DNA from: Hydrolagus colliei
Lineage: Eukaryota
Direction: 5' to 3'
Assembly (NCBI GenBank): GCA_035084275.1
Contig: CM068763.1
Coordinates: 5,828,001-5,892,000, forward strand
DNA length: 64,000 nucleotides
The notes below the pieces were generated by a model. It ran no database searches. It saw only the letters and a list, made by a program, of their open reading frames with translations, and was not told where the DNA came from. Positions 19,529 through 56,058 of this stretch are shown in pieces (position 1 is the stretch's first letter; each line of letters begins with the position of its first letter). A program made the position numbers and the translations under genes.

Positions 19529-22500
19529 GCTCGGGGAACATCAGGAAGAGCTGGTTCCAAAACAGGAGGAGGAACATGTAGACATAGACCTCCTAGATAC
19601 CGTGAGTGAGGGCAGGCTGGCAAATCACTGTGTAATTGACAGGTTGAGGGAGCGGGTGGATTACAGAGCAGCATAGAGAGTGGCGACCAGTAACATCACA
19701 GTCACGTCCAGCGCAGCAACAAGTCCTACCCGTACAGTCCCTGCCACCTGATGCCTCACTTTCAGGAGTCTGGATAACAATTATAATAATCCTTCCATTT
19801 GAAACATTGCTTTATTACGTTATTCAGACTTCTCAAACCTATTCTCCAGTGATACTGTAAACTCTTTCCCCAAATAACCTCAAATAACCTCAGTCAGGTG
19901 TCATTGAGCTGCTGACTGGGAGTGGGGAGATGTCTAAGATCTGAGATAAAATTCACACAAACAGGAGGTGTGAGTACAATCTCTAGATAATTCCCAGCGA
20001 AAGCACACAGCAAACGTGTCTCTCTCACCCTCCTGCAGTGGAGAAGACATCCCAAGTCTCTGGATAGTTAAGGATAGTTAGAATCAAGACAGTTAGTCTG
20101 CAAACATTAATAGCTGCTTTGTATTTCAGGATAAAGAACTCTCTAACCCTCTTGAGGCCAAACGAGGCTCAAGACAACCATCAAGCCAATCCGGTGAGTG
20201 TCAGATCCAGAAACTCAATGAGTTACAGTGTGGCCGGGTTTGGACACTTGTCATTCTCCAGCTGAACCATGCAATGTCTTCAGGCAGACATGTCCGCCAA
20301 CACACAGCTGGCAGTTTCTGTCTCTTATCCAGGTCAACGGCATATCCGTGGAGATGGATGAGGCGAGCAACGAATAAGGTTTTTCGTATGATTCCGCTCT
20401 ACACAAACTCCCCCCAAATTCCATTGCATCGGACACTATCTTTCTGCCTTCACAGTTCTTTGTGAAACAAGTCATTAAAGCAATTCCTTCGGTCACCCTA
20501 CTCAAACACTGCCCTTCCCCCAGCTGCTCGGATCTTGTGTGAAGCTCTTTGAGACTTGAGTCTGTTGTGCGCGGTGTTTATGAGGGCACGTTGTTGTTGT
20601 TTGTTAGGCTAAGCACAAAACAGCTGATAACGGGGGAGAACAAAGTGATAGAGGTGGACATCCCGGAGACAGTGATTGACAGCAGGCCGGTGAGTTGCTG
20701 TTTTTGTCTAATGACACAGGGTAGCAGGGGTATTACATAGCAGCTTACACAGTGGTGATCGCCAACATACACAACAGTATCACGTCAGCATCTGTACATT
20801 CCCAGTCACTTGTCACCTCGCTGTCATAAGTCTGCATCATAATCCTTGTCTTTGATACAATCATGTTTTTGGAACATCTCAAAGCGCTTCACAGGATATA
20901 CTGTAAAGTATAGTGACTATTCTATTGGGAGAAGTGCGGCAGCCAATTTAGGCACAGTGATGTCCCACAAATAGGCAGTGCCTCGGGACTTCCTACTGAA
21001 GTGAAAAGTGCTTTACAAATGTAATTTTCTTGTTATTGGAGTGAGTGACCAATTGTATCTGGGACGTTGTTTGCCAAGGCATCAGGAGAGAAAAATTCCC
21101 TTCTATTTTCAAATTGTACCACAAGATTTATAACGTCAGTTGAAAAGGCAGATGGGAGCTCGGATTAGCATCTCTTCTAGAGAATGCAGCGCCTCCGACA
21201 ATGCAGCACTCAAGTCCCCAGCACTGCACTGATGTGTCAGTTTAAACTCTCTGATTCTAAGTCCTGATGTGGGGCTTCAACCCACAACTTTCTGACAGAT
21301 GCGTGAATCCTTCCACTAAGCCAGGCTGTTAGTGAGTAGCTGAATCTTTCACTTTGTCTTGAGGAAGAACAACAAAAAGAGGAGGAAATCAGGTAATGTA
21401 AAAATGTTTGTGACCCCAGGAGATATGCAGGAGGTGCATGGAGCTCTAGACTGTTTTGAAGCTGATTTTCAGTGACACTGTCTAATCTCTAGCAATTTCT
21501 GTCTCCACAGACATCAGTAGAAGACAGAAGGGAGGAACTCTCCAGGGGTAAGCAAAAGTCTCTGTCCGTTTCACAGTGGGTGTGATCCCCACTCAGTGGC
21601 TCCTCACCCAGTGGGGCAGGGGGTGTCTCTGCCCATCAGCTCAGGGGCTGGAGACTGTACCTGGGAACAGGAATTGCGGCTTCAGATCCCAGCGGATCCC
21701 CTCAGCTTGTCACCCTTTCCAGGGAAGTTGAACCAGCAGCATGTCTGAGAAGGTGGCATCCTGGAGGAGAAAGGGTCTTGTGTTTGCTGAGCTGCCCGGT
21801 CCAAAGGCCTGATCTCACTCCACGTTTCATTCCCCCCTCACTTCCCCCCTCCCCCACCTACACCCCCACCACACCGGAGCCTCATCTCTCATTTTGCTCC
21901 TTAACCTTGTATCCTGCTCGTATCCGAGCGAGACGTTTACGTTTGCAGAACAGTTGGTCTGGCAGGAAGGGCTTGTGTGTGGGAGGGTCATTGTCGACAA
22001 GTCTTTTTGTTTTCCCCCCAGGAGAAGAAGCAGCAGCAGCAAAGGAGAATAAGAAGAGGAAAAGATACAGTGATGCTTTCTCATGATACTCTCTGAGTGA
22101 ATCTCTCTCTCAATCTCTCTTTGACCAGGCCTTCCGCTGCCCTCCTAACTCTCCCCCCTTTCCTACTCTCCTTCCCCTGCCCCTACACCGACCCTTCCGC
22201 CCCCTGCTCGGGTCCCGACCTAACTGTTCAGCGCCTTGGGACGTCCTCCCGACGTGAAAGGCGCTCTAAAAATGTTGTCAGTGACACTCTCTTGGTGACG
22301 CTCTCAGTCGCACACTGAGGCTTATGATGGTGAAGGGCAGAGTTGGCACAGGCTTCAGCCAACATTTATTTACTGAGAAACAAAAACAGAAGTTGCTGGG
22401 AAAACCCAGCAGGTCAAGCAGCATGTATTTTGTGTTTTATTTATTTACTCAGGATCACTGTTGGTTGCTCTCGGTTACCAGGAAGACTGTTGGAGCCCAG

Positions 22501-22726
22501 GGATCGTGGACGTATTGAGGAAATGGCTGGAGCTGTGAGGGGGTTTTGTTCGATGGGAGTCAGAAAGTTTGGGGTGAAATAGGTTGAATGGGCTTGTTAA
22601 TGGACACCTCCCAGTTAATAACCAGCTGTTTCCTGTTTGTACCTCGGACTTATTGATGTTTCCTGTCATACCCACAGGAAATGCTGCTGGTGTTGATTTC
22701 CCTGGAGGAAAAAGGCTGAGGATTGA
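19529..22726 (+). pseudogene. Inverted, 5'-truncated pseudogene of the repeat-protein family, tail-to-tail with copy 1
   Basis: Homologous exons: 19529-19601; 20130-20193 (64 nt, frameshift); 20333-20373 (donor gt>at); 20608-20689; 21364-21392 (29 nt vs 45, frameshift); 21511-21547; 22022-22064 (donor gt>at); 22678-22726 (premature TGA at 22694-22696 inside the CCWCC motif). Confidence 0.8.
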
Positions 22727-24051: not shown

Positions 24052-24057
24052 TTTATT
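24052..24057 (-). terminator. Putative polyadenylation signal (AATAAA) of copy 1
   Basis: Minus-strand AATAAA ~290 nt after the stop codon, at the end of an AT-rich putative 3' UTR. The same site is present in copies 2 (~41269) and 3 (~57086). Confidence 0.55.
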
Positions 24058-24348: not shown

Positions 24349-27300
24349 TCAATCCTCAGCCCTTTTCCTCCAAGGAAAACAGCACCAGCAGCATTTTCTG
24401 TGGGTTTGAGAGGAAACATCAATGAGTCCCAGGTACAACAGGAAACAGCTGGACATTAACAGGGAGGTGTCGATTAACAAGTCCATTCAACCTATTTCAC
24501 CCCAAATATCTCCCCCTCACAGCACCAGCCGTTTCCTCAATAAGCCTCAGTGTGCAACTGAGAAAGCATCACCATGAGAGTGTCACTGTACCTTTTCTTC
24601 TTCTTCACTTTCTTTTCAGCTGCTGCTGCTCCTGGTGGGAAAGTAAAAAGACTTGTTGACAATGGGCCTCCCACACGCGAGCCATTCCCGCCAGACCAAC
24701 TGTTCTGCAAACCTAAAGGTCTCACTCGGCTACGAGCAGGATTCGAGGATTAGGATCAAAATGATTAAGAGACGAGGCTCGAGTAGAGGAGAGAATGAAA
24801 CGCGGAGTGAGATCAGGCCTTTGGACCGGGCAGCTCAGCAAACACAAAACCCTTTCTCCTCCAGGATGCCACCTTCTCAGACATGCTGCTGGTTCAACTT
24901 CCCTGGAAAGGGTGACAAGCTGAGGGGATCCGCTGGGATCTGAAGCCACAATTCCTGTTCCCAGGTACAGTCTCCAGCCCCTGAGCTGATGGGCAGAGAC
25001 ACCCCCTGCCCCACTGGGTGAGGAGCCACTGAGTGGGGATCACACCCACTGTGAAACGGCCAGAGACTTTTGCTTACCCCTGGAGAGTTCCTCCCTTCTG
25101 TCTTCTACTGATGTCTGTGGAGACAGAAATTGCTAGAGATTAGACAGTGTCATTGAAAATCAGCTTCAAAACAGTCTAGAGCTCCGTGCACCTCCTGCAT
25201 ATCTCCTGGGATCATATCATTTTTTACATTACCTGATCACTCTGTCTCTCCTGTACTTCCTCCTTCGACTGTTCTTCCTAAAGACAAAGTGAAAGCTTCA
25301 GCCACTCGCTCACAGCCTGGCTTAGTGGTACCATTCAGGCACCTGTCACAAAGTTGTGGTTTGAAGCCTTTGATTGTACCAAAGGCAAGGATTATTATGG
25401 TAATCATTATTATCCAGACTTATGACAGCGAGGTGACAAGTGACCGGCAATGTACAGGTGATGACGTGATACTGTCGTGTATGTTAGCGAGCACCACTGT
25501 GTAAGCTGCTATGTAAAACCCCCGCTACCCCGTGCCCTTAGACAAAAACAGTAACTCACTGGCCTGCCGTCAAGCATTGTCTCCGGGACATCCACATGAA
25601 CCTCCTCGTTCTCCCCCGTCAACAGCTCTTCCAGCTTTGTGCTAAGTCTAACAAACAACAATTTTCCCTTAAAAACAATTCTGCTCAGAAACAACCGACT
25701 CGGGTTTCAAGGCACTTCACACAGTTATTGGGAGCTCCGAGCAGCCGGGGGAAGGGCAGGGTTTGAGTAGGGCAACTGAAGGAACTGCTAAAATGACTTG
25801 TTTCTCAAAGAACTGTGAAGGCAGAAAGATAGTGTGCAAAGCAAAGGAATTTGGGGGGAGTTTGCGTAGAGCGGGGACATAGGAAAACCCTTACTTGCTG
25901 CTCGCCTTGTGTGTCTCCAGGGAGATGCTGTTGAGCTGGAGAAGAGACAGAAAGGAAAGGATTAACTGCCGGCTACGCCCTGGAGGACATGTCTGTCTAA
26001 AGACATTGCATGGTTCAGCTGGAGAATATCAAGCATCCAAAGCACCGGTGAAGAGTTTTGAGAAGTCTGAATAACATAATAAAGCAATGTTTCAAATGGG
26101 AGGATTATTATAATTATTATCCAGACTCCTGAAAGCGAGGCGTCAGGTGGTGGGACTTGTTGCTGCGCTGGACGAGACTGTGATGTTACCGGTCGCCACC
26201 ATCTATGCTGCTCTGTAAACCACCCGCTCCCACGACCTGTCAATTACACAGTGACTTGCCAGCCTGCCCTCACTCACGGTATCGTGGAGGTCCATGTCTA
26301 CATGTTCCTCCTCCTGCTCTGGAACCAGCTCTTCCTGATGTTCCTCCAGCCTAAGAAACAACAATAACAATTCGCCTGTGAAAACGATGTCACTCACATT
26401 GTGCTCAGGTCTCAAAGACCTTCACTTACATTCCAGGAGCTATCATCAGCTGGGCAAAGGGCAGGTTTTGCGCAACATTGCCAGGTTCCGCAACTATCTT
26501 ACCCCCCGCGCTGCCGAAACACTTGTGCATGCTTACATCACCTCACGGCTGGATTATGGAAATTCTCTCCTAGTCGGCCTCCCCAATTCCTCCATTCATA
26601 GGCTGCAGGCCATCCAAAACTCTGCAGCCCGTGTACTATCCCGCACCAGCCTCCGTGACCACATAACCCCCACCCTCGCCCGTCTCCACTGGCTCCCCAT
26701 CCTCCAGAGGATCAAGTTTAAGATCCTCGTCCTCACCTACAAGGCCTTACACGGCCTTGCCCCATCCTACCTAACCGATCTACTCTCCCCCTACACGCCC
26801 ACCCGGACCCTCCGTTCAACAGGACTTGGCCTGCTCCAAACCCCCCGCCCGAACCGCCCCACCATCGGAGGCCGGGCCTTCAGTTTCTCCGCTCCCACCT
26901 TATGGAATGCCATCCCTCAATCCCTCCGTTTCGCCTCTTCACTTTCCTCTTTCAAGGCCGATTTGAAGACTTTCCTCTTCGATCGTGCCTTTTGTTCTAC
27001 CCCGAACTCCTTTACCTCCCCTTCGTGTTTCACCCCTTCCCAAACACTCCCCTCCCAGCTCGGGTCACACGCCTCTTGTTCAGCGCCTTGGGACGTCCTC
27101 CCGACGTGAAAGGCGCTCTATAAATGTAATTTGTTGTTGTTGTTGTTGTTTGAGGATAGTGAACAAAGGAATGGCCAAAGTCATTAGATTCTAAGAGAAC
27201 TTTGAAAGAGAAGGTCCAAGGCAGAGGGATTTTGTGCAAAGTGGGAAGATAGAAAAAACCTTACGTGCTCCTTGTCTCATCCCTCTCCTCAGCAAAGCTG

Positions 27301-30300
27301 TTGACCTGGAAAAGAGACAGAAAAGAAAAGGATTAGCTGCCGGTAAGGCACTGGTGGACATGTCTGTCTGAAGACATTGCAGGATTGGGCTGGAGAATGT
27401 CAAGCATCCAAACCCGGCTGCGCTGTAACTCCATGAGTCTCTGGGTCTGACACTCACCAGGTTGGCTTGAGGCTCCTCCTTAGCCTCAGTTGGCCTCTCC
27501 AACTCCTGGTCAGTTGTAGGGAGTTCTTTTTCCTGAAAAGATAGCAGCTGTTAGTGTTTGCAGACTAACTGTCTTCACTCTAACTATCCTTAACTATCCA
27601 GAGACTTGGGATGTCTTCTCCACTGCAGCAGGGTGAGAGAGACACGTTTGCTGTGGGCTTTCGCTGGAAATTTTCTAGAGATTGTACTCACACCTACTGT
27701 TTGTGTGAATATCGTCCTGGATCATATATATCTCCACACTCCCATTCAGGAGCTCAATGAGACCTGACTGAGGTTTAAAATTGAGGAAAGAATTTACAGT
27801 ATCACTGTTGAAGAGGTTTGAGAAAGCTGAATAACATAATAAAGCAATGTTTTAAAAAATGGAAGGATTATTATAATTATTATCCAGACCCCTGAAAGTG
27901 AGGTGCCAGGTGGCAGGGACTGTACGGTGGGACTTGTTGCTGTGCTGGACGTGACTGTGATGTTACCGGTCGCCACCATCTGTGCTGCTCTGTAAACCAC
28001 CCGCTCCCTCAGCCTGTCAATTACACAGTGACTTGCCAGTCCTGGCCTCACTCACGGTATCTATGAGGTCCACATCTACGTGTTCCTCCTCCTGTTTTGG
28101 AACCAGCTCGTTCTGATGTTCCCCGAGCCTAAGAAACAACAACAATTTGACTATAAAAACGATGTCACTAACATTGGACTCAGGTCTCAAAGAGCTTCAC
28201 ACAGATTACGGGAGCTACGAGCAGTCGGGCAAAGATTTGAGGATAGTGAACAAAGGAAAGGCCAAAGTCATTAGATTATGAGAGAACTTTGAAAGAGAAG
28301 GTCCAAGGCAGAGGGATTTTGTGCAGTGGGGAGATAGAAAAAACCTTACGTGCTCCTCGCCTCATCCCTCTCCTCAGTAAAGTTGATGACCTGGAAAAGA
28401 GACAGAAAAGAAAATGATTAGCTGCCGGTAAGTCACTGGTAGACATGTCTGTCTGAAGACATTGCAGGATTCGATTGGAGAATGTCAAGCATCCAAACCC
28501 AGCTGCGCTGTAACTCCATGAGTCTCTGGGTCTGACACTCACCAGGTTGGCTTCAGGTTCCTCCTTAGCCTCAGTTGGCCTCTTCAACTCCTGGTCAGTT
28601 GTAGGGAGTTCTTCATCCTGAAATGCAAAGCAGCTGTTAGTGTTTGCAGACTAACTGTCTTCACTCTAACTATCCTTAACTATCCAGAGACTTGGGATTG
28701 TCTTCTCCACTGCAGCAGGGTGAGAGAGACACGTTTGCTGTGGGCTTTCGCTGGGAATTTTCTAGAGATTGTACTCACACCTCCTGTTTGTGTGAATATC
28801 GTCTTGGATCATATATATCTCCACACTCCCATTCAGGAGCTCAATGACACCTGACTGAGGTTTAAAATTGGGGAAAGAATTTACAGTATCACTGGTGAAG
28901 AGGTTTGAGAAGGCTGAATAACATAATAAAGCAATGTTTTAATAAATGGAAGGATTATTATAATTATTATCCAGACTCCTGAAAGTGAGGTGTCAGGTGG
29001 CAGGGACTGTTCGGTGGGACTTGTTGCTGCGCTGGACGTGACTGTGATGTTACTGGTCGCCACCATCTATGCTGCTCTGTAATCTACCCGCTCCCTCAGC
29101 CTGTCAATCACACAGTGACTTGCCAGTCCTGGCCTCACTCACGGTATCTATGAGGTCCACATCTATGTGTTCCTCCTCCTGTTTTGGAACCAGCTCGTCC
29201 TGATGTTCCCCGAACCTAAGAAACAACAACAATTTTCCTATAAAAACGATGCCACTAACATTGGACTCAGGTCTCAAAGAGCTTCACAGATTCCGGGAGA
29301 TACGAGCAGTCGGGCAAAGATTTGAGGATAGTGAACAAAGGAACGGCCAAAGTCATTAGATTCTGAGAGAACTTTGAAAGAGAAGGTCCAAGGCAGAGGG
29401 ATTTTGTACAAAGTGGGGAGATAGAAAAAACCTTACATGCTCCTCGCTTCATCCCTCTCCACTGCAAAGCTAATGACCTGGAAAAGAGACAGAAAGGAGA
29501 GGATTAGCTGCTGGCAAGGCACTGGTGGACATGTCTGTCTGAAGATATTGCAGGATTGGCCTGGAGAATGTCAAATCTTCAAACCCAGCCACGTTGTGAC
29601 CTGGTGTGTCTAGGTATGACACTCACCACTTCGGCTTGATGCTGGTCTTGATCCTCTTGTGGCATTGCCAATTCAAGGTGAAGAGGAGAAGAGTGTTCTT
29701 CATCCTAAAACACAAAGCAACTGTTATTGTAAGCGGACTTGGTGTCTTGAATCTAACTATCCATAACTGTCCAGAGCATCTCTAAAGCAGCAGAGAGTGT
29801 CTAGTTTGCTGAGCGGTTTCTGTGTGTTTTAGCTGGAAATCAACTGGAAAGTGTAATCCCCTTTTTTTGTGGGACATTGATCAGCCAATGTATCAAATGC
29901 AAACATGACTATTACTTTTATTATTATTATTATTATTATTATTTGTATTGGCTGATTGGAGGGCTTCAAAAGTAGGGATCCCGTGCACCTTTTTAGCATT
30001 ACTGCTTGCTGAGAAAGAAATGGATTGTAATTCAGCCTGGCTCCCAGTCACACATGGTCAGGATCACAGCGATCCTTGCCCACCAGACCACAACAACATC
30101 AAATGATATTTTTGTAGAGCATTTCCTGTCTGGAGGACATCACAATACACGAAAGACAGTGAGCTTCCTATGGGAAATAGTTTACAGTAACTCCGGAGAA
30201 GCACTTTGAGAAATCGGAAAGACATGATAAGTGTATCAAATGGAAGGATTCTAGTTCAAATAATTACTATCCAGACTCCCAATATCAAGATGACAGATGA

Positions 30301-32563
30301 CAGGGATTGTACGAGTGGTACGTGGTGCTGCGCTGGATGTGACTGTTACCAGCGAACACCATCTATACTGCTCTGTAAAATGCCTACTCCCGCGGCCCAT
30401 CAGTTACACAACCACTCGCCCGCCTGCCCTCACTCACGGTCTCTGTGACATCAATCACTTGTGTGACCTCCTTCTCCGGCACCTGGTCTTCCTCTTCCAC
30501 GTTATTCCTGAGCCTAACAAACAACAACAACATAAACACTGCGGCTCTATTGCACTCACGTTCCAAAGAGCTTCACACAGACACCGAGAGTTCGGAGCAG
30601 CCGGGAGACGGGCAGGGTTTGAGGATAGCAAGCAAAGGAACAGCCAAATTGACGAGTTTCTGAGCGAACGTTAAAGGCAGAAAGAGCAGGTCAGAGGCAG
30701 AGGGGTTTGGGGGGAGTTTGTGGAGTGTGGGGACAAAGCAAAAACCTTACTTCTTCCTCGCCTCATCCCTCTCCGCGGCAATGGTCTTGACCTGGAACAG
30801 AGACAGAAGGGAAAGGATCAGCTGCTGGCAAACACACAGCTGCCGTATTTGTCTAAAGACATTGCAGGATTGGGCTGGAAAATGTCAAAGCTACAAACCC
30901 AGCTGCCCTGTAACTCGGTGAGTCTCTGTCTGACACTCACCACTTTGACCTGCTGTTCAAGGGCCTCTTGCGCCATCACCAGCTGCAAGTCGAGCGGCGA
31001 AGAGATGCCTTTTTCCTGAAACACAAAGCAGCTGTTAGTGCGTGTGGACTCAGCACCTTGATGCTAATGATCCTTAACTATTGAGAGCTTTGGGATGTCC
31101 CATCCACTGTAAGGGAATGAGAGGATCTAGTTTCCGGTATTGTTTCTGTGTGTTTTTCCTGGAGATTCACTGGGGATTGTCCTCCCTCCTCCTCCTCCTG
31201 TAGCCTCTCAGATCAGGGAAAACTCCACACTCCCGAGACATTCTTCTGGGTATCCCACTCAGGAACTCAATGCCACCTGAGACACACTTGCCAGCCTCCC
31301 ACTGACTGGGATGGTAGCTGTCAGTGTCCAGCAGTGCATTTGGATCAGGAATTGCCATGTGCTGGATGCCGGAGGGGGAGTCCCAAGTAAAGCTGGGGCT
31401 TATGTATGTGTTCCATTGGCTAGTTCAGTGACCGATGTGGACCCATGTCTCCCAATGACTGTCTCTCATTCACTCCTTGGATGTTTGTGGGACACTGCTG
31501 TACGCAACCGGACGACGTGATCAGCCACTGAACCAAATACAAGGATTATTGTTGTTACCTGGTTGGAGGGGGGGGATAACAAAAATTCCCAGCACCGTGC
31601 AATCATTATTTCTTCTTCCTGAGGAGAAAATAATGGATTGTCATTCAGCCTGGCTCCCAGTCAGGTGGTCAGACACATGGCCCTCCTCACCCAGCAGACC
31701 ACAGCAACAATAAATTACATGACTTTCAAACGCACAAAAGACAGTGAGAATAATTTGGGAAATAGTTTACAGTATCCCTGCTGAAGCGCTTTGAGATGCC
31801 TGAATGACCTGATGAGGCGCTGCATCAAATGGAAGGATTAATATTGTAAGAATTATGATCCATACTCCCCACAGGGAGGAAGGAGATAGGTGAAAGGGAT
31901 TGTACAAATGAGATGTGTTGCTGCGCTGGACGTGACTGGGATGTTACCGGTCACCACTGTCTACGCTATTCTGTAAATTGCCAGCTCCCTCGGTCCGTCA
32001 TTTACACAGTGACTTGCCCGCCTGCTCACTCACGGTCAGTGGGAATGTCATTCGTTGAGATGCTTGTTCCTCCCCTCCTTTTTCAGCATTCTGTTGCCTA
32101 ACAAACAACAACAAATTGCCATGATAAACAAAGATGTTAATATTGGTTTCAAATAACTACACAGATACCGGGAGCACCGAGCAAGGGATGGCTACGGTTT
32201 GAGGAATAAGTGATTAGTTTCTGTGGAGTGTCTAAAGGTAGAAACATAGAGTTTGAGAAAAAGGGATTTGAGTTTGCGGAGTTGTTTCAAAACCTTTACC
32301 TGCTCTTCTCCTCCCTCTCCGCTTCGATGCTCTTGACCTGCAGCAAAGACACAAAGGAGAGGATTAGCTGCTTGCAAGGCCCTGGCGACAATTTCTGCCT
32401 GAAGACATCGCAGGATTGGGCAGGAGAATGTCGAGTCTCCAAACCCGGCTGAGCTGTAACTCACTGAGTCTCTAGGTCTGAAACTCACCAGGTTCGCTTG
32501 GCGCTCCTCTTCCTCCTGAGCCCATGCAAGCGCCAGGTCAAGATTGTCCAGATGCTGTTCTTC
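24349..32563 (-). CDS. Multi-exon gene, copy 1: acidic tandem-repeat protein (>=412 aa, N-terminus unresolved) with C-terminal polybasic/Cys-rich tail
   Basis: Hand-spliced exons in transcription order: 32489-32563, 32300-32337, 32034-32097, 30941-31015, 30751-30791, 30438-30513, 29627-29704, 29437-29477, 29143-29215, 28543-28617, 28350-28390, 28056-28128, 27458-27532, 27265-27305, 26278-26350, 25895-25935, 25560-25647, 25233-25277, 25078-25114, 24592-24631, 24349-24397. All have AG acceptors (several with a CTAAC branch point and pyrimidine tract) and all internal junctions have GT donors (mostly gtgagt/gtaagg). The 1239 nt form one frame: EEQHLDNLDLALAWAQEEEERQANLVKSIEAEREEKSR...DEELPTTDQELKRPTEAKEEPEANLVINFTEERDEARSTLGEHQNELVPKQEEEHVDVDLIDT...TSVEDRREELSRGAAAAEKKVKKKKRKCCWCCFPWRKRAED*. 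Confidence 0.85.
26473..27149 (+). mobile_element. Young 5'-truncated L2 insertion in an intron of copy 1, antisense to the gene
   Basis: Open C-terminal frame LHWLPILQRIKFKILVLTYKALHGLAPSYL and (TTG)n tail. Empty site in copy 2 at ~43685. Confidence 0.93.
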
Positions 32564-33869
32564 CTGAAATACGAAGCTGCTGTTAGTGTGTACGGACTCC
32601 ATGTCTTAACTCAAAGCTGTTCCTCTGCTCAGTGGGCACCGGCCAACTTTGTGTCGCCTGCCCTGCTCTTTATTGATTCAAACCCGCAGCTCAGCCATGG
32701 TTGAAATGGATTGTCTTGAGAAGGGACATGAAGAAGGCAAGACCGTGGGTAAAATGGAGGGATTGTGGGTCAAAACTCCACAATGTGGGGGCAGAGATCT
32801 CAATGCTCGAGAGCTAAGGGTAGGGCAGCAAATACTTTGAACCTGATGTCCACCGAACGGAGGAAGCAGACAGACTGATTTGGGACTAAGACATCAGAGG
32901 AGCAAGAACATGGAAAGCTTTGAAGCTTGGAATGAAGTATTGAATGAGCAGCAGTGAAGACGGGCAAGGATGTGAGGGATCGGTTTGCGGAGCTTGGCAA
33001 CGAATGGGACATGAGCTGCAGAGTTATGAATAATCTGCAGTTTCTAGAGGGAGAGTTGTGAAGTCAAGTGAGCAGGAAGTTGGCAAAGTCAAACATGTCT
33101 CCTGTATGGTGTTTGTGGGAAACCTCTGTGTGCAACTGATTGCCATATTTCGCCCGAAAATACACCGTCACTACACTTCACAGTATATCCTTGACAATGT
33201 GATTGGTGATATTTCAAATTATATTACCTCATTGGATGCATCCGGGAATTTCTCCAAATGCTCCCTCAACGATAGTTTTTCCTGAGAAAGAAATGGATTG
33301 TCATTTAGACTGAATCCACCCCAGTCAGACGGTCAGGCACACGGCCCTCCTCATCCAGCAGACAGTGACAATACTGTGGGAAATGGTTTTAATATTGATT
33401 TTTCCTGATTCTGACCCAGACTCTAATGTCATTCAACAGATCACTGGCCTTGGACATTCCCAGACTGACGGGCTGTGTACATGGGCAGTGAGAGTGCGAG
33501 ATCTCCTGAACTGTGTCTGGGTGTTGGGGTGTGAATATTGACTTATTGACTGGACACTGTACACCCTGCCGCACCCCTTGCTGTGTGTTGGAGGAGCCTC
33601 TCAGATCAGGGAGATCTCCACACTCCCCGGCCACTGTCCTGTGCGTCACAGTCAGGGGCTGAATAACAACTATTTAAATTTGCCGCCATATGTCCCAGAA
33701 TGTGTGTCAGGCCCAGGACATCCTGTGATGGGACTGTCAATAACCTCTCATCTCTTTCCCCCTCCCAAGCCCCGCCCATGCACTCACTTTGGGACGTGGT
33801 TTCTCCTCCTTTGCCTGTGAGCGCTCTGACATGCTGTCTGGCTTGGAAGGCCCAAAGTAAATAGGAGGC

Positions 33870-41570: not shown

Positions 41571-44500
41571 TCAATCCTCAGCCCTTTTCCTCCAATGAAA
41601 ACAGCACCAGCAGCATTTTCTGTGGGTATGAGAGGAAACATCAATGAGTCCCAGGTAGAACAGGAAACAGCTGGACATTAACAGGGAGGTGTCGATTAAC
41701 AAGTCCATTCAACCTATTTCACCCCAAATATCTCCCCCTCACAGCACCAGCCGTTTCCTCAATAAGCCTCAGTGTGCAACTGAGAAAGCATCACCATGAG
41801 AGTGTCACTGTACCTTTTCTTCTTCTTCACTTTCTTTTCAGCTGCTGCTGCTCCTGGTGGGAAAGTAAAAAGACTTGTTGACAATGACCCTCCCACACGC
41901 GAGCCATTCCCGCCAGACCAACTGTTCTGCAAACCTAAAGGTCTCACTCGGCTACAAGCAGGATTCGAGGATTAGGAGCAAAATGATTGAGAGACGAGGC
42001 TCGAGTGGAGGAGGGAATGAAACGCGGAGTGAGATCAGGCCTTTGGACCGGGCAGCTCAGCAAACACAAGACCCTTTCTCCTCCAGGATGCCACCTTCTC
42101 AGACATGCTGCTGGTTCAACTTCCCTGGAAAGGGTGACAAGCTGAGGGGATCCGCTGGGATCTGAAGCCACAATTCCTGTTCCCAGGTACAGTCTCCAGC
42201 CCCTGAGCTGATGGGCAGAGACACCCCCTGCCCCACTGGGTGAGGAGCCACTGAGTGGGGATCACACCCACTGTGAAACGGACAGAGACTTTTGCTTACC
42301 CCTGGAGAGTTCCTCCCTTTTGTCTTCTACTGATGTCTGTGGAGACAGAAATTGCTAGAGATTAGACAGTGTCATTGAAAATCAGCTTCAAAACAGTCTA
42401 GAGCTCCGTGCACCTCCTGCATATCTCCTGGGATCATATCATTTTTTACATTACCTGATCACTCTGGCTCTCCTGTACTTCCTCCTTCGACTGTTCTTCC
42501 TAAAGACAAAGTGAAAGCTTCAGCCACTCGCTCACAGCCTGGCTTAGTGGTACCATTCAGGCACCTGTCACAAAGTTGTGGTTTGAAGCCTTTGATTGTA
42601 CCAAAGGCAAGGATTATTATGGTAATCATTATTATCCAGACTTATGGCAGCGAGGTGACAAGTGACCGGCAATGTACAGGTGATGACATGATACTGTCGT
42701 GTATGTTAGCGAGCACCACTGTGTAAGCTGCTATGTAAAATCCCCGCTACCCCGTGCCCTTAGACAAAAACAGTAACTCACTGGCCTGCCGTCAATCACT
42801 GTCTCTAGGACATCCACGTGAACCTCTTCGTTCTCCCCCATCAACAGCTCTTCCAGCTTTGTGCTAAGTCGAACAAACAACAATTTTCCCTTAAAAACAA
42901 TTCTGCTCAGAAACAACCGACTCGGGTTTCAAGGCACTTCACACAGTTATTGGGAGCTCCGAGCAGCCGGGGGAATGGCAGGGTTTGAGTAGGGCAACTG
43001 AAGGAACTGCTAAAATGACTTGTTTCTCAAAGAACAGTGAAGGCAGAAAGATAGTGTGCGAAGCAAAGGAATTTGGGGGGAGTTTGCGTAGAGCGGGGAC
43101 ATAGGAAAACCCTTACTTGCTGCTCGCCTTGTGTGTCTCCAGGGAGATGCTGTTGAGCTGGAGAAGAGACAGAAAGGAAAGGATTAACTGCCGGCTACGC
43201 CCTGGAGGACATCTCTGTCTAAAGACATTGCATGGTTCAGCTGGAGAATATCAAGCATCCAAAGCACCGGTGAAGAGTTTTGAGAAGTCTGAATAACATA
43301 ATAAAGCAATGTTTCAAATGGAAGGATTATTATAATTATTATCCAGACTCCTGAAAGCGAGGCGTCAGGTGGTGGGACTTGTTGCTGCGCTGGACGAGAC
43401 TGTGATGTTACCGGTCACCACCATCTATGCTGCTCTGTAAACCACCTGCTCCCTCAACCTGTCAATTACACAGTGACTTGCCAGCCTGCCCTCACTCACG
43501 GTATCGTGGAGGTCCACATCTAAATGTTCTTCCTGCTCTGGAACCAGCTCGTCCTGATGTTCCCCGAGCCTAAGAAACAACAACAACAATTTGCCTATGA
43601 AAAATATGTCACTCACATTGTACTCAGGTCTCAAAGACCTTCACATACATTCCAGGAGCTATCAGCTGCTGGGCAAAGGGCAGGGTTTGAGGACAGTGAA
43701 CAAAGGAACGGCCAAAGTCATTAGATTCTGAGAGAACTTTGAAAGAGAAGGTGCAAGGCAGAGGGATTTTGTGCAAAGTGGGGAGATAGAAAAAACCTTA
43801 CGTGCTCCTCGCCTCATCCCTCTCCTCAGTAAAGCTGATGACCTGGAAAAGAGACAGAAAAGAAAAGGATTAGCTGCCGGTAAGGCACTGGTGGACATGT
43901 CTGTCTGAAGACATTGCAGGATTGGGCTGGAGAATGTCAAGCATCCAAACCCGGCTGCGCTGTAACTCGATGAGTCTCTGGGTCTGACACTCACCAGGTT
44001 GGCTTGAGGCTCCCCCTTAGCCTCGGTTGGCCTCACCAACTGGTCAATTGTTGGGTGTTCTTTATCCTGAAATACAAAGAAGCTGTCAGTGTTTGCAGAC
44101 TAACTGTCTTCACTCTAACTATCCTTAACTATCCAGAGACTTGGGATGTCTTCTCCAATGCAGCAGGGTGAGAGAGACACGTTTGCTGTGTGCGTTTGCT
44201 GGGAATTATCCAGAGATTGCACTCACAACTCCTGTTTGTGTGAATATCGTCTTCGACCATATATCTCTCCACACTCCCAGTCAGGAGCTCAACGAGACCT
44301 GACTGAGGTTTAAAATTTGGGAAAGTATTTACAGTATCACTGGTGAAGAGGTTTGAGAAGTCTGAATAGCGTAATAGAGCAATGTTTCAAATGGAAGGAT
44401 TATAATTATTATCCAGACTCCTGAAAGTGAGGCGTCAGGTGGCAGGGACTGTACGGTGGGACTTGTTGCTGCGCTGGACGTGACTGTGATGTTACCGGTC

Positions 44501-47500
44501 GCCACCATCTATGTGGCTCTGTAAACCACCCGCTCCCTCAGCCTGTCAATTACACAGTGACTTGCCAGCCTGCCCTCACTCACGGTATCTAGGAGGTCCA
44601 CATCTAAATGTTCTTCCTGCTCTGGAACCAGATCGTACTCAGTTGGCCTCTTCAACTCCTGGTCAGTTGTAGGGAGTTCTTTATCCTGAAATGCAAAGCA
44701 GCTGTTAGTGTTTGCAGACTAACTGTCTTCACTCTAACTATCCTTAACTATCCAGAGACTTGGGATTGCCTTCTCCACTGCAGCAGGGTGAGAGAGACAC
44801 GTTTGCTGTGGGCTTTCGCTGGGAATTTTCTAGAGATTGTACTCACACCTCCTGTTTGTGTGAATATCGTCTTGGATCATATATATCTCCACACTCCCAT
44901 TCAGGAGCTCAATGACACCTGACTGAGGTTTAAAATTGGGGAAAGAATTTACAGTATCATTGGTGAAGAGGTTTGAGAAGGCTGAATAACGTAATAAAGC
45001 AATGTTTTAATAAATGGAAGGATTATTATAATTATTATCCAGACTCCTGAAAGTGAGGTGTCAGGTCGCAGGGACTGTACGGTGGGACTTGTTGCTACGC
45101 TGGACGTGACTGTGATGTTACTGGTCGCCACCATCTATGCTGCTCTGTAAACCACCCACTCCCTCAGCCTGTCAATCACACAGTGACTTGCCAGTCCTGG
45201 CCTCACTCACGGTATCTATGAGGTCCACATCTATGTGTTCCTCCTCCTGTTTTGGAACCAGCTCGTCCTGATGTTCCCCGAACCTAAGAAACAACAACAA
45301 TTTTCCTATCAAAACGATGCCACTAACATTGGACTCAGGTCTCAAAGAGCTTCACACAGATTACGGGAGATACGAGCAGTCGGGCAAAGATTTGAGGATA
45401 GTGAACAAAGGAACGGCCAAAGTCATTAGATTCTGAGAGAACTTTGAAAGAGAAGGTCCAAGGCAGAGGGATTTTGTACAAAGTGGGGAGATAGAAAAAA
45501 CCTTACATGCTCCTCGCTTCATCCCTCTCCACCGCAAAGCTAATGACCTGGAAAAGAGACAGAAAGGAGAGAATTAGCTGCTGGCAAGGCACTGGTGGAC
45601 ATGTCTGTCTGAAGATATTGCAGGATTGGCCTGGAGAATGTCAAATCTTCAAACCCAGCCACGTTGTGACCTGGTGTGTCTAGGTATGACACTCACCACT
45701 TCGGCTTGATGCTGGTCTTGAGCCTCTTGTGGCATTGCCAATTCAAGGTGAAGAGGAGAAGAGTGTTCTTCATCCTAAAACACAAAGCAACTGTTATTGT
45801 AAGCGGACTTGGTGTCTTGAATCTATCTATCCATAACTGTCCAGAGCATCTCTAAAGCAGCAGAGAGTGTCTAGTTTGCTGAGCGGTTCCTGTGTGTTTT
45901 AGCTGGAAATCAACTGGAAAGTGTAATCCCCTTTTTTGTGGGACATTGCTGTGCACAGCTGCCTGCAAAGTTTCATCCACGAAATACACTTTATAGTAAC
46001 TCCAATGAAGAGCTGTGAGACGTCTGGGATAACATGATCAGCCAATGTATCAAATGCAAACATGACTATTACTTTTATTATTATTATTATTTGTATTGGC
46101 TGATTGGAGGGCTTCAAAAGTAGGGATCCCGTGCACCTTTTTAGCATTACTGCTTGCTGAGAAAGAAATGGATTGTAATTCAGCCTGGCTCCCAGTCACA
46201 CATGGTCAGGATCACAGCGATCCTTGCCCACCAGACCACAACAACAACATCAAATGATATTTTTGTAGAGCATTTCCTGTCTGGAGGACATCACAATACA
46301 CGAAAGACAGTGAGCTTCCTATGGGAAATAGTTTACAGTAACTCCGGAGAAGCACTTTGAGAAATTGGAAAGACATGATAAGTGCATCAAATGGAAGGAT
46401 TCTAGTTCAAATAATTACTATCCAGACTCCCAATATCAAGATGACAGGGATTGTACGAGTGGTACGTGGTGCTGCGCTGGATGTGACTGTTACCAGCGAA
46501 CACCATCTATACTGCTCTGTAAAATGCCTACTCCCGCGGCCCATCAGTTACACAGCCACTCGCCCGCCTGCCCTCACTCACGGTCTCTGTGACATCAATC
46601 ACTTGTGTGACCTCCTTCTCCGGCACCTGGTCTTCCTCTTCCACGTTATTCCTGAGCCTAACAAACAACAACAACATAAACACTGCGGCTCTATTGCACT
46701 CACGTTCCAAAGGGCTTCACACAGACACCGAGAGTTCCGAGCAGCCGGGAGACGGGTAGGGTTTGAGGATAGCAAGCAAAGGAACAGCCAAATTGATGAG
46801 TTTCTGAGCGAACGTTAAAGGCAGAAAGAGCAGGTCAGAGGCAGAGGGGTTTGGGGGGAGTTTGTGGAGTGTGGGGACAAAGCAAAAACCTTACTTCTTC
46901 CTCGCCTCATCCCTCTCCGCGGTAATGGTCTTGATCTGGAACAGAGACAGAAGGGAAAGGATCAGCTGCTGGCAAACACACAGCTGCCGTATTTGTCTAA
47001 AGACATTGCAGGATTGGGCTGGAAAATGTCAAAGCTACAAACCCAGCTGCCCTGTAACTTGGTGAGTCTCTGTCTGACACTCAACACTTTGGCCTGCTGT
47101 TCAAGGGCCTCTTGCGCCATCACCAGCTGCAAGTCGAGCGGCGAAGAGATGCCTTTTTCCTGAAACACAAAGCAGCTGTTAGTGCGTGTGGACTCAGCAT
47201 CTTGATGCTAATGATCCTTAACTATTGAGAGCTTTGGGATGTCCCATCCACTGTAGGGGAATGAGAGGATCTAGTTTCCTGTATTGTTTATGTGTGTTTT
47301 TCCTGGAGATTCACTGGGGATTGTCCTCCCTCCTCCTCCTCCTGTAGCCTCTCAGATCAGGGAAAACTCCACACTCCCGAGACATTGTTCTGGGTATCCC
47401 AGTCAGGAACTCAATGCCACCTGACACACACTTGCCAGCCTCCCACTGACTGGGATGGTAGCTGTCAGTGTCGAGTAGTGCATTTGGATCAGGAATTGGC

Positions 47501-48706
47501 ATGTGCTGGATGCCGAAGGTGGAGTCCCAAGTAAAGCTGGGGCTTATGTATGTGTTCCATTGGCTAGTTCAGTGACCGATGTGGACCCATGTCTCCCAAT
47601 GACTGTCTCTCATTCACTCCTTGGCTGTTTGTGGGCATTGCTGTACGCAACCGGACGACGTGATCAGCCACTGAACCAAATACAAGGATTATTGTTGTTA
47701 CCTGGTTGGAGGGGGAGGATAACAAAAATTCCCAGCACCGTGCAATCATTATTTCTTCTTCCTGAGGAGAAAAAAATGGATTGTCATTCAGCCTGGCTCC
47801 CAGTCAGGTGGTCAGACACATGGCCCTCTTCACCCAGCAGACCACAGCAACAATAAATTACATGACTTTCAAATGCACAAAAGACAGTGAGAATAATTTG
47901 GGAAATAGTTTACAGTATCCCTGCTGAAGCGCTTTTAGATGCCTGAATGACCTGATGAGGCGCTGCATCAAATGGAAGGATTAATATTATTAGAATTATT
48001 ATCCACACTCCCCACAGCGAGGAAAGAGATAGGTGAAAGGGATTGTACAAATGAGATGTGTTGCTGCGCTGGACGTGACTGGGATGTTACCGGTCACCAC
48101 TGTCTACGCTATTCTGTAAATTGCCAGCTCCCTCGGTCCGTCATTTACACAGTGACTTGCCCGCCTGCTCACTCACGGTCAGTGGGAATGTCATTCGTTG
48201 AGATGCTTGTTCCTCCCCTCCTTTTTCAGCATTCTGTTGCCTAACAAACAACAACAAATTGCCATGATAAACAAAGATGTTAATATTGGTTTCAAATAAC
48301 TACACAGATACCGGGAGCACCGAGTAAGGGATGGCTACGGTTTGAGGAATAAGTGATTAGTTTCTGTGGAGTGTCTAAAGGTAGAAACATAGAGTTTGAG
48401 AAAAAGGGATTTGAGTTTGCGGAGTTGTTTCAAAACCTTTACCTGCTCTTCTCCTCCCTCTCCGCTTCGATGCTCTTGACCTGCAGCAAAGACACAAAGG
48501 AGAGGATTAGCTGCTTGCAAGGCCCTGGCGACAATTTCTCCCTGAAGACATCGCAGGATTGGGCAGGAGAATGTCGAGTCTCCAAACCCGGCTGAGCTGT
48601 AACTCACTGAGTCTCTAGGTCTGAAACTCACCAGGTTCGCTTGGCGCTCCTCTTCCTCCTGAGCCCATGCAAGCGCCAGGTCAAGATTGTCCAGATGCTG
48701 TTCTTC
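41571..48706 (-). CDS. Multi-exon gene, copy 2 of the repeat-protein family (two splice-site changes; possibly an altered isoform or an early pseudogene)
   Basis: Exons 48632-48706, 48443-48480, 48177-48240, 47085-47159 (donor GT>TT at 47084), 46895-46935, 46582-46657, 45697-45774, 45507-45547, 45211-45283, 44584-44685 (fused exon), 43995-44066, 43802-43842, 43500-43569, 43117-43157, 42782-42863 (shifted acceptor), 42455-42499, 42300-42336, 41814-41853, 41571-41619. All exon-length changes versus copy 1 are multiples of 3. Ends KCCWCCFHWRKRAED*. Confidence 0.72.
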
Positions 48707-51700: not shown

Positions 51701-51774
51701 TAAAATCTAAATAAATATGATTTTTTAAAAATCCACAACTGTTTGTGTGACACTGCTGTGTACAATTGGCTGCT

Positions 51775-55486: not shown

Positions 55487-56058
55487 TGCCTCGATGATGT
55501 CCACTTTTATGACTTCTTCCACCACTGGTACCAAAGATTCCTCGATGTTCTTAACAAAGAACAAGAACAATTTGCTATTATGAATGATTTTGTTCACATT
55601 GGACTCGGGTCTGAAAGATTTTAACATATAAAACGGGAGCTCCGAGCAGCTGGTGGATCGGCAGGTTTTGAGGATGGCGTCCAAAAAATAGCCAAAGTGA
55701 TTAGTTTCTGAGTGAACTTTGAAGGCAGAAAGAGAAGGTCCGAGGCGAGAGGATTTGGTGTGTGTTTGTGGAGAGTGGGGACACAGCAAAAGCCTTTCTT
55801 GATAGTCGCCTCTTCCCTCTCGGCGTCGATGTTGACCTGGAAAAGAGACAGAAGGGAGAAGATTAGCTGCCAGCAAGGACCCATGTCTGTCTAAAGACAT
55901 TGCAGGATTGGGCTGGAGGATGTCAAGTCTCCAAACTTGGCTGCACTGTAACTCTATGAGTCTCTGGGTCTGACAGTCACCAGGTTGGCTTGAGGCTCCT
56001 CCTTAGCCTCTTGTGGTATCACCATCTCCAGTTCGAGAGGGGAAGGGAGTCCATTGTC
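55487..56058 (-). pseudogene. Divergent relic three-exon cassette of the same family
   Basis: Exon a 55981-56058 (DNGLPSPLELEMVIPQEAKEEPQANL). Exon b 55799-55836 (VNIDAEREEATI) has its donor changed to gaaagg. Exon c ends at 55487 and has a degenerate acceptor. Intron sequences are homologous to the other cassettes. Confidence 0.7.

What the first reader, a model, noticed from the sequence alone, without database searches (positions are those of the whole stretch)
24349..32563. Hidden small-exon gene encoding an unrecognised acidic repeat protein
Seen: the ~1.1-kb repeats that look like non-coding satellite each carry three short minus-strand exons with canonical splice signals. Twenty-one exons join into a stop-free 412-codon frame. 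The ORF track cannot show this because no exon exceeds 88 nt. The product is Glu/Asp-rich with a recurring motif V(N/I/K)x(F/I)xxERDEAR. Inference: a largely disordered or coiled-coil, possibly lineage-restricted protein. I cannot assign it to a known family.
Basis: partly seen in the sequence, partly recalled or inferred. Interest (0 to 1): 0.92.

Follow-up and report, generated by a model that had tools for sequence, protein, structure and literature searches.

The report
Acidic repeat gene built from exon cassettes
A stretch that looks like a 1.1-kb satellite is most likely a real, tandemly copied gene whose tiny exons encode an acidic repeat protein with a lipid-anchor-like tail, but no RNA data were available to show that it is expressed.

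Summary
On the minus strand of 24349-32563 there are 21 short exons of 37-88 nt. All have AG acceptors and GT donors. One phase-consistent frame of 412 codons is stop-free, while the other two phases hold 14 and 28 stops. The repeat is a cassette of three exons (75 + 41 + 73 nt, 63 codons), spaced 1085-1548 nt. I add two upstream exons carrying an ATG (33832-33788 and 33281-33228), which gives about 445 codons.

The gene is one of three 97%-alike tandem copies in the window. Two decayed copies carry frameshifts, lost donors and stops. That contrast, and exon indels that are all multiples of three, argue for a gene kept by selection. Amino-acid constraint is weak: dN/dS is about 0.6-0.7, and exons differ more than introns.

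No family was found exon by exon (Pfam, PDB, a profile against 1.84 billion proteins). The joined-protein search was left out by rule.

The product is 28% Asp/Glu, has no signal peptide in its first exons, and ends in a polybasic run followed by CCWCC. My best reading is a lipid-anchored polyacidic scaffold. The scan's other notes on this stretch concern the same DNA, not other DNA.

The parts
33788..33832 (-). Exon E1, coding part: ATG plus 14 codons (MSERSQAKEEKPRPK), donor GTGAGT. Probable start codon.
   Evidence: No in-frame ATG further upstream within the open stretch.
33228..33281 (-). Exon E2, 54 nt, phase 0-0 (EKLSLREHLEKFPDASNE), AG/GT. Homologous to exon-like X1.
32489..32563 (-). 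Exon A1, 75 nt (EEQHLDNLDLALAWAQEEEERQANL).
32300..32337 (-). Exon B1, 38 nt (VKSIEAEREEKS plus 2 nt).
32034..32097 (-). Exon C1, 64 nt (1 nt plus QQNAEKGGEEQASQRMTFPLT).
31559..31618 (-). X1: optional exon-like segment, 60 nt, AG/GT, open, phase 0-0. It is the unit-2 homologue of E2. Use unknown.
30941..31015 (-). Exon A2, 75 nt.
30751..30791 (-). Exon B2, 41 nt (VKTIAAERDEARK plus 2 nt).
30438..30513 (-). Exon C2, 76 nt.
29627..29704 (-). Exon A3, 78 nt.
29437..29477 (-). Exon B3, 41 nt (VISFAVERDEARS plus 2 nt).
29143..29215 (-). Exon C3, 73 nt.
28543..28617 (-). Exon A4, 75 nt.
28350..28390 (-). Exon B4, 41 nt (VINFTEERDEARS plus 2 nt).
28056..28128 (-). Exon C4, 73 nt (1 nt plus LGEHQNELVPKQEEEHVDVDLIDT).
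27458..27532 (-). Exon A5, 75 nt.
27265..27305 (-). Exon B5, 41 nt (VNSFAEERDETRS plus 2 nt).
26466..27147 (.). 682-nt retroelement-tail insertion inside the B5-C5 intron. Present in copies 1 and 3, absent in copy 2.
   Evidence: No Pfam hit for its ORF.
26278..26350 (-). Exon C5, 73 nt.
25895..25935 (-). Exon B6, 41 nt (LNSISLETHKASS plus 2 nt). Its A exon was lost in copies 1-3 but is still present, though broken, in copy 0.
25560..25647 (-). Exon C6, 88 nt (1 nt plus LSTKLEELLTGENEEVHVDVPETMLDGRP). A second in-frame AG lies 6 nt downstream.
25233..25277 (-). Tail exon T1, 45 nt (EEQSKEEVQERQSDQ).
25078..25114 (-). Tail exon T2, 37 nt (TSVEDRREELSR plus 1 nt).
24592..24631 (-). Tail exon T3, 40 nt (2 nt plus AAAAEKKVKKKK plus 2 nt): the polybasic run.
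24349..24397 (-). Last coding exon T4 (1 nt plus KCCWCCFPWRKRAED plus stop at 24351-24349): the cysteine cluster.
24052..24057 (-). AATAAA about 295 nt after the stop: a possible poly(A) signal in AT-rich DNA, so it may be chance.
   Evidence: Read.
41571..49987 (-). Gene copy 2, 97% alike. The A2 donor is GT>TT. A 457-nt deletion fuses A4 and C4 into an open 102-nt exon (44685-44584). B4 is absent and the retroelement insertion is absent.
57384..64000 (-). Gene copy 3, 96.7% alike, cut by the window end inside unit 2. All 17 visible exons are open with AG/GT.
19529..22723 (+). Copy 0, inverted and tail-to-tail with copy 1, 80-85% alike: a pseudogene. The A exon is 64 nt, the B donor is GT>AT with a TAA behind it, T1 is 29 nt, the T3 donor is GT>AT, and a TGA lies inside the Cys cluster.
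55487..56600 (-). Remnant of an older copy. The A exon is intact (56058-55981), the B donor is GT>GA, and the C-like exon is 63 nt.

Best explanation
This is a real protein-coding gene, one of three near-identical tandem paralogues in the window, with 23 very short exons on the minus strand (33832 down to 24349, about 445 codons).

How it grew: its middle was built by repeated tandem duplication of a genomic block. That block carries a frame-symmetric set of exons, A (phase 0-0) followed by the B+C pair (together a multiple of 3). The block was ancestrally four exons; E2 and X1 are the fourth type. Each duplication therefore added 63 codons without breaking the frame.

What is shown: the exon anatomy, the single open phase, the copy history, and the decay of two other copies.

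What is inferred: the product has no signal peptide or hydrophobic span in its exons and is strongly acidic. It is proline-punctuated and therefore largely disordered. It presents five or six copies of a short conserved motif (V-x-x-F/I-x-x-ERDEAR) plus a hydrophobic-acidic run at the end of each C exon.

The last two exons encode a polybasic run and then a CCWCC cluster flanked by Trp/Phe and more basic residues, with no CaaX box. I read this as an electrostatic membrane-binding patch that brings the cysteines to a membrane-bound palmitoyl transferase. The protein would then sit on the cytosolic face of a membrane as a lipid-anchored, polyanionic, multivalent scaffold or cation buffer.

I put 'real gene with this exon structure' at about 0.6-0.7. 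Given a gene, I put 'lipid-anchored scaffold' at about 0.35.
For: Exon signals and frame:
- 22 of 22 introns are GT-AG, with pyrimidine tracts of 0.6-0.95 and CTRAY branch-like sites before A and B exons.
- The coding phase has 0 stops in 437 codons. The other phases have 14 and 28 stops, and introns have 4.5% stops per codon.
- Exon lengths vary between units only so that A stays a multiple of 3 and B+C stays a multiple of 3: 75/75/78/75/75, and 102/117/114/114/114/129.

Comparison of copies:
- Small exon indels between gene copies are 3, 3, 3 and 3, 3 nt. Among intron indels, 3 of 15 and 3 of 11 are multiples of three.
- The 457-nt deletion in copy 2 left an open 34-codon chimeric exon.
- Copy 0 is only 15-20% diverged, yet 5 of its 8 recognisable exons carry lesions. 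The remnant at 55.5-56.6 kb has lost a donor.
- By contrast, copy 1 keeps all 23 exons intact, although its units are 36-46% different in their exons.
- dN/dS is below 1 in all three copy pairs: 0.70, 0.73 and 0.57.

Product:
- Composition is 124 of 435 residues Asp+Glu, net charge about -70, 20 Pro, and 4 Cys, all in the last exon.
- The polybasic-plus-cysteine logic is established for SNAP25/23 and BK channels (abstracts of PMC5362264 and PMC3256903, seen in the listing).
Against: - There is no RNA evidence. The one run found (X1) covers introns and exons alike with short contigs and shows no joint at any predicted intron.
- No spliced product or relative was found: 0 hits for the A-exon profile in 1.84 billion proteins. 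Three word-index searches gave only one unspliced genomic ORF.
- Amino-acid constraint is weak, and counts are small. Exons differ more than introns between copies (3.4% against 1.9%, p=0.002) and between units (0.54-0.64 against 0.71-0.76 identity).
- The three intact copies are so young (2-3%) that their intactness alone proves little.
- Copy 2 has a broken A2 donor.
- The tail could equally be a nuclear localisation signal.
- Palmitoylation, disorder and multivalent binding are inferences. No structure prediction was possible without joining exons.
Confidence: 0.6

Rival explanations
1. A recently dead or never-expressed gene array. The three copies are young duplicates of a gene that has already lost function, and their frames are open only because too little time has passed.
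For: Copies differ by only 2-3%. dN/dS of 0.57-0.73 rests on few changes and is not clearly below 1. Exons diverge faster than introns. Copy 2 has a GT>TT donor. Two further copies in the window are plainly dead. No RNA or spliced product was found.
Against: All five small exon indels between copies are multiples of three, against 6 of 26 in introns. There are no stops among about 70 exon substitutions in a GAR-rich frame where G>T makes stops. The old internal units keep AG, GT, phase and open frame at 36-46% exon divergence, whereas copy 0 broke 5 of 8 exons at 15-20%.
Confidence: 0.2
2. A non-coding host transcript. On this reading the functional parts are the conserved intron segments, as in tandem small-RNA host arrays, and the exons are spacers.
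For: The 150-nt A-B intron and about 120 nt after the C exon are more alike between old units (0.65-0.83) than the interiors of exons A and C (0.39-0.59).
Against: There was no Rfam match at E<=1 in 19000-35000 on either strand. RNAalifold on 7 intron copies gave an unfavourable covariation term (+1.41) and only 2 of 36 pairs with compensating changes. A single phase is open over 437 codons and lengths preserve multiples of three, which a spacer would not keep. No plus-strand exon recurs from unit to unit.
Confidence: 0.07
3. The gene is real, but the product is nuclear. The K-rich run in the second-to-last exon acts as a classical nuclear localisation signal. The acidic repeats then act as a histone- or basic-protein-binding chaperone, or as a multi-site binder of a nuclear partner.
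For: The run of lysines/arginine across the last two exons fits, from memory, a monopartite NLS. The acidic composition is typical of nuclear chaperones. C exons end in hydrophobic-acidic runs such as VDVDLIDT, VIDVTET and VDIIEA which, from memory, resemble SUMO-interaction motifs.
Against: Four cysteines packed with Trp/Phe directly after the basic run are not needed for an NLS and are typical of acylation sites. The motif resemblance is recalled, not tested.
Confidence: 0.25

Closest known systems
Intragenic multi-exon block duplications of nebulin (TRI region, eight exons repeated three times) and titin (abstracts of PMC9109913 and PMC9142044, seen in the listing)
   Same: A block of several exons, together frame-neutral, is repeated head to tail inside one gene and lengthens a repeat protein. 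The copies are alike enough to be prone to gain and loss; copy 2 here has lost part of a unit.
   Different: The block here is three tiny exons in about 1.1 kb, not eight exons in about 10 kb. There are five to six copies of very different ages. The protein is acidic and unrelated, and the whole gene is also triplicated.
Polybasic-plus-cysteine-cluster palmitoylation signals (SNAP25/SNAP23, BK channel STREX; abstracts of PMC5362264 and PMC3256903, seen in the listing)
   Same: A run of basic residues lies next to clustered cysteines in a protein with no membrane span. In those proteins, electrostatic binding precedes S-acylation.
   Different: The cluster here sits at the extreme C-terminus of an otherwise acidic protein. 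No acylation has been shown.
Paralemmin and GAP-43/BASP1-type lipid-anchored acidic proteins (recalled, not from a call)
   Same: Hydrophilic, acidic, largely unstructured proteins held on the inner face of membranes by lipidated cysteines beside basic residues.
   Different: No Pfam match to any exon tested. The protein ends in ...AED, not in a CaaX box. The cysteines are C-terminal, unlike GAP-43. The 63-residue repeats have no counterpart.
Calpastatin (recalled, not from a call)
   Same: An acidic, disordered protein made of repeated units, each encoded by several very small exons and each carrying short conserved binding motifs.
   Different: No sequence match was found. The calpastatin motif that I recall (TIPPxYR) is absent from all exons. 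The unit length is 63 residues, not about 140.

Membership tests
Paralemmin family | Match to the Pfam paralemmin domain | tested here: not met
   10 of the 23 exon peptides (all A and C exons of 24 or more residues except C1) were scanned against Pfam at E<=10, with 0 families. B and tail exons are too short for the tool. The joined protein was not scanned, by rule.
Paralemmin family | C-terminal CaaX box with neighbouring cysteines (recalled definition) | tested here: not met
   The last exon ends ...RKRAED followed by the stop. The cysteines lie 8-12 residues from the end.
Polybasic + cysteine-cluster S-acylation signal (functional class) | Clustered cysteines directly beside a run of basic residues in a protein without a membrane span | tested here: met
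   T3 encodes AAAAEKKVKKKK and T4 encodes KCCWCCFPWRKRAED. No hydrophobic span occurs in any exon peptide.
Polybasic + cysteine-cluster S-acylation signal (functional class) | Cysteines actually carry acyl chains, and membrane binding depends on them | not testable with these tools
   Needs acyl-exchange chemistry and localisation of a tagged tail.
Intragenic multi-exon cassette duplication (nebulin TRI / titin type) | The same ordered set of exons with its introns is repeated head to tail inside one gene | tested here: met
   Five full A-B-C units plus one B-C unit are spaced 1085-1548 nt apart, and their introns align at 71-93%.
Intragenic multi-exon cassette duplication (nebulin TRI / titin type) | The block is frame-neutral, so that any copy number keeps the frame | tested here: met
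   A exons are 75 or 78 nt. B+C sums are 102, 117, 114, 114, 114 and 129 nt.
Intragenic multi-exon cassette duplication (nebulin TRI / titin type) | All copies are included in one mature transcript | not testable with these tools
   No RNA run was available.
Tandem small-RNA host-gene array | A known snoRNA or miRNA family, or a conserved fold, in each repeat's intron | tested here: not met
   Rfam at E<=1 gave 0 matches in 19000-35000. RNAalifold on 7 intron copies gave no covariation support.

The most novel reading that the evidence does not exclude
This is a lineage-restricted gene family of cartilaginous fishes, amplified both inside the gene (exon cassettes) and as whole-gene tandem copies. 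It encodes palmitoyl-anchored polyacidic proteins whose exons turn over faster than their own introns. The arrays of short motifs would then be under diversifying selection, as in a conflict with a pathogen or between the sexes, rather than merely drifting.
Probability: 0.15. Interest if true: 0.6.

Novelty: new variant of a known kind. Interest (0 to 1): 0.35.

Why it matters
If expressed, this is a protein family that ORF-based and short-exon-blind annotation would miss altogether. It is also a very clean natural example of a repeat protein growing by duplication of a frame-neutral set of mini-exons, with old, young, chimeric and dead stages side by side in 64 kb. The pattern of introns that are more alike than exons is unusual and could point to diversifying selection or to constrained splicing elements in short introns. 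In itself, though, an orphan acidic repeat protein without expression data is a modest finding.

Tried and rejected
Repeats. Tandem Repeats Finder cannot see the 1.1-kb period because its longest period is 500. The repeat finder and blastn of the region against the window showed the units.

RNA evidence. The look-up of sequencing runs listed one run, X1, with no RNA on record. Read laying on 27001-33000 gave short contigs over introns and exons alike. Its 7 listed joints all had 20-25 letters on the shorter side, and none lay at a predicted intron. So this run neither supports nor refutes splicing.

Family searches, exon by exon:
- Pfam on 10 exon peptides gave 0 families.
- PDB profiles of the A-type and C-type exons gave 0 matches.
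- The A-type exon profile against 1,835,955,588 proteins gave 0 hits at E<=0.001. I chose the A type because held-out units scored 21-29 bits with it, against under 8 bits for the C type and 10-20 bits for the B type.
- The ESM Atlas on the A2 exon gave no usable hit.
- The word-index search with unspliced stop-free stretches around A1 gave one Logan ORF, P0001. It is unspliced and 55/70 identical, with 17/18 in the exon part. The stretches around A4 and C6 gave none. That tool's length window (0.55-1.75 times the query) cannot reach a full-length product of about 445 residues, so these blanks are weak.

Steps left out. Structure prediction, disorder prediction and coiled-coil prediction on the whole protein or on a 63-residue unit were therefore left out.

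Hypotheses rejected:
- Intronic small RNA: no Rfam match and no covariation.
- Antisense gene: rejected.
- Troponin-T-like N-terminus: a recalled 'EEKPRPK' resemblance only; the order of parts and the rest do not fit.
- Calpastatin: the motif I recall is absent.
- SCPP genes: no signal peptide, and the exon phases are mixed.

Papers. Searches for the strings CCWCC and ERDEAR returned only primers and unrelated words. Within that library I found nothing in print on this motif. Supplements were not consulted.

Full report
WHAT IS THERE. A cassette of three exons recurs:
- A: 75 nt (78 in unit 3), phase 0-0.
- B: 41 nt (38 in unit 1), leaving 2 nt over.
- C: 73 nt (64, 76 and 88 in units 1, 2 and 6), taking 1 nt.
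There are five full cassettes. A sixth has lost its A exon. Four tail exons follow, of 45, 37, 40 and 49 nt, and the stop lies at 24351-24349. A-exon starts lie at 32563, 31015, 29704, 28617 and 27532, so the spacing is 1548, 1311, 1087 and 1085 nt. The repeat finder gives the same figures.

With the last C exon starting at 25647 (88 nt), the 21 exons sum to 1239 nt.

All 22 introns of my extended model are GT-AG: 12 GTGAGT, 5 GTAAGG and 5 other GT donors. Pyrimidine tracts are 0.6-0.95, and branch-like CTRAY sites precede A and B exons.

IS IT MORE THAN CHANCE? Yes.
- Counted exon by exon, the coding phase has 0 stops in 437 whole codons. The other two phases have 14 of 423 and 28 of 429. The antisense frames have 3, 21 and 11. 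The introns have 364 of 8102, or 4.5%.
- The left-over letters at the split codons (ag, aa, at, ac, ac, aa, g, ag) cannot begin a stop.
- A like-for-like scan found 17 exon-like segments on the minus strand. It found 6 on the plus strand, at 4 places, none recurring between units.
- The units are not independent. Even so, the old, diverged parts alone give roughly 300 codons without a stop.

1. Two upstream exons fit the same frame. E1 (33832-33788) has an ATG with A at -3, 15 codons and a GTGAGT donor. E2 (33281-33228) is 54 nt with AG/GT. There is no in-frame ATG further upstream in the open stretch, which reads as a threonine run through a CAA-type microsatellite. The model then has 23 exons and 1338 nt, about 445 residues.
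2. E2 has a homologue in unit 2, X1 (31618-31559; 60 nt, AG/GT, open), and a decayed one in unit 3 that lacks a GT. The ancestral unit therefore had four exons.
3. The whole gene is one of three tandem copies. Copy 1 spans 22855-34416. Copy 2 spans 40098-50541 (97%). Copy 3 runs from 56964 to the window end (96.7%).
4. Two decayed copies exist. One is an inverted copy on the plus strand at 19529-22723, tail to tail with copy 1. The other is a remnant at about 55.5-56.6 kb.

GENE OR RELIC? The copies serve as a natural experiment.

Copy 0 is 80-85% like copy 1, and 5 of its 8 recognisable exons are damaged:
- an A exon of 64 nt;
- a B donor changed from GT to AT, with a TAA behind it;
- a T1 of 29 nt instead of 45;
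- a T3 donor changed from GT to AT;
- a TGA inside the cysteine cluster.
The remnant has a GT>GA donor and a C-like exon of 63 nt.

In contrast, copy 1 keeps all 23 exons intact, although its internal units are only 54-64% identical in their exons.

Between the young copies, the small exon indels are 3, 3, 3 (copy 1 against copy 2) and 3, 3 (copy 1 against copy 3). Only 3 of 15 and 3 of 11 intron indels are multiples of three. The three large 'exon indels' listed for copy 3 are the missing 5' part beyond the window end. The 457-nt deletion in copy 2 fused A4 to C4 into an exon that is still open for 34 codons. All 17 exons of copy 3 that lie in the window are open with AG/GT.

Against this, copy 2 has GT>TT at the A2 donor; a GT three bases upstream would keep the frame. 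Protein-level constraint is also weak:
- dN/dS by Nei-Gojobori is 0.70, 0.73 and 0.57 for the three copy pairs, on 19-23 changes each.
- Exon divergence exceeds intron divergence: 42/1239 against 135/7072 (p=0.002), and 28/978 against 108/5541 (p=0.07).

I conclude that the frame and splice signals have been kept by selection over the long history of the units. The amino-acid sequence is only loosely constrained, as is usual for low-complexity acidic linkers.

EXPRESSION. This is the decisive gap. The look-up of sequencing runs returned one run with no RNA on record. Laid on 27001-33000, it covers every bin, introns included, with contigs of a few hundred bases. It shows no joint at any predicted intron. 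It is DNA-like and says nothing on splicing.

WHAT FAMILY?
- Pfam on 10 exon peptides: nothing at E<=10.
- PDB with profiles of the A-type and C-type exons: nothing at E<=1.
- A 26-position profile of 11 A-type exons against 1.84 billion representatives: 0 hits at E<=0.001. A protein with several such repeats should have summed to a clear score. So neither this gene's product nor a close multi-repeat relative is in that library as a spliced protein.
I therefore used natural stop-free unspliced stretches. Around A1 it found one 75-residue Logan ORF, P0001, which reads through the donor like genomic DNA. It is 55/70 identical, with 17/18 in the exon part and 38/52 in the intron part. Around A4 and C6 it found nothing.
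- The Atlas gave no usable hit.
These blanks are weak evidence of novelty. The queries are 25-residue acidic peptides, and the length window of the word-index tool cannot reach a 445-residue product.

THE PRODUCT AND HOW IT MAY WORK. Summed over exons, 124 of 435 residues are Asp or Glu and 54 are Lys or Arg. There are 20 prolines, no tyrosine and 4 cysteines, all in the last exon. Neither E1 nor E2 looks like a signal peptide, and no exon encodes a hydrophobic span.

Each unit carries three recognisable pieces:
- a variable acidic A exon;
- the best-kept piece, the B exon, with V-x-x-[FI]-x-x-ERDEAR exact in B2-B4, one residue off in B5, EREEK in B1 and lost in B6;
- a C exon ending in a hydrophobic-acidic run.
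Prolines inside every unit argue against a long coiled coil. A disordered chain with short helical or linear motifs is more likely (inference).

The tail exons encode an alanine run with a lysine run (T3). T4 then encodes a lysine, CCWCC, FPW and RKRAED. A basic patch beside clustered cysteines is the arrangement by which SNAP25/23 first bind the membrane electrostatically and are then palmitoylated. In the BK channel the same arrangement controls palmitoylation. I saw only the abstracts of PMC5362264 and PMC3256903, in the listing. There is no CaaX box.

My best reading is a cytosolic protein tethered to a membrane by S-acylated cysteines, displaying a polyanionic chain with five or six copies of a binding motif. 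It would be a multivalent scaffold or a local cation buffer. The main functional rival is a nuclear acidic protein whose lysine run is a localisation signal. From memory, the C-exon ends resemble SUMO-interaction motifs, but I did not test that.

AN ODD PATTERN. Between old units, the A-B intron (about 150 nt) and about 120 nt after the C exon are more alike than the exon interiors.
- Mean pairwise identity per 30-nt bin is 0.65-0.83, against 0.53-0.59 for exon A and 0.39-0.44 for exon C.
- The A exon is 0.47-0.68 identical, against 0.75-0.83 for the 120 nt after it.
- Between gene copies there are exon-limited bursts. C6 of copy 2 has 7/82 differences, with flanks at 1/100 and 2/100. T1 of copy 3 has 5/45, with flanks at 0/100 and 0/100.
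I looked for an intronic RNA and found none: no Rfam match and no covariation. Slippage and 3n-indel turnover of GAR-rich coding DNA, diversifying selection on the motif arrays, or splicing elements in short introns could each explain it. This is unresolved.

COMPARISON WITH WHAT IS KNOWN. The growth mechanism is that of the nebulin triplicate region and the titin segmental duplication: blocks of exons repeated inside a gene (abstracts of PMC9109913 and PMC9142044, seen in the listing). Here it is in miniature and at several ages. In type, the protein resembles lipid-anchored acidic proteins such as paralemmin or GAP-43, and the many-mini-exon acidic repeat protein calpastatin (both recalled). 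It meets none of their defining features that I could test.

VERDICT. No family could be assigned, and the function is inferred only from composition and the tail. This is a neat, moderately interesting annotation gap and a good example of repeat growth by exon cassettes.

OTHER NOTES OF THE SCAN. Notes s1-902528, s1-902567 and s1-902659 describe the same DNA and agree with what I measured. Notes from other windows call the genome a chimaera; I did not check that.

Noticed in passing
window 28391-28542 and homologous A-B introns (32338-32488, 30792-30940, 29478-29626, 27306-27457, 55837-55980, 20194-20332): The short intron between exons A and B is more alike between old units (75-83%) than the exons beside it (47-68%). 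There is no Rfam match and no covariation.
   Followed up: partly
window 42782-42862 (C6 of copy 2) and 58271-58315 (T1 of copy 3): Exon-limited bursts of substitutions between gene copies: 7/82 and 5/45, with flanking 100 nt at 0-2 differences. One codon has all three bases changed.
   Followed up: no
window 33871-33991: A CAA/CAACTA-type microsatellite lies directly upstream of the proposed ATG. In the ATG's frame it reads as an open threonine run without an upstream ATG. Copy 2 is 30 nt shorter here.
   Followed up: partly
window 35518-36120 (+) and 53153-54151 (-): ORFs with reverse-transcriptase domains (Pfam RVT_1, E 7e-28 and 9e-21): LINE fragments between the gene copies.
   Followed up: yes
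window 26466-27147, 37915-38539, 51774-52395, 6847-7254: Copies (73-88% alike) of a retroelement 3' tail whose ORF has no Pfam match. One sits in an intron of copies 1 and 3 but not of copy 2, which orders the events.
   Followed up: partly
window 34155-34416 and 35132-35393: A 262-nt direct repeat, 97% alike. The first copy lies at the upstream edge of the duplicated gene block.
   Followed up: no
protein P0001 (Logan contig of 1680 nt, source not shown): An unspliced ORF from another assembly that matches the A1 exon and its intron (55/70). The exon part is better kept (17/18) than the intron part (38/52). It could be a further paralogue or another species.
   Followed up: partly
window 47084-47085: Copy 2 has TT instead of GT at the donor of exon A2. 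A GT three bases upstream would keep the frame.
   Followed up: partly
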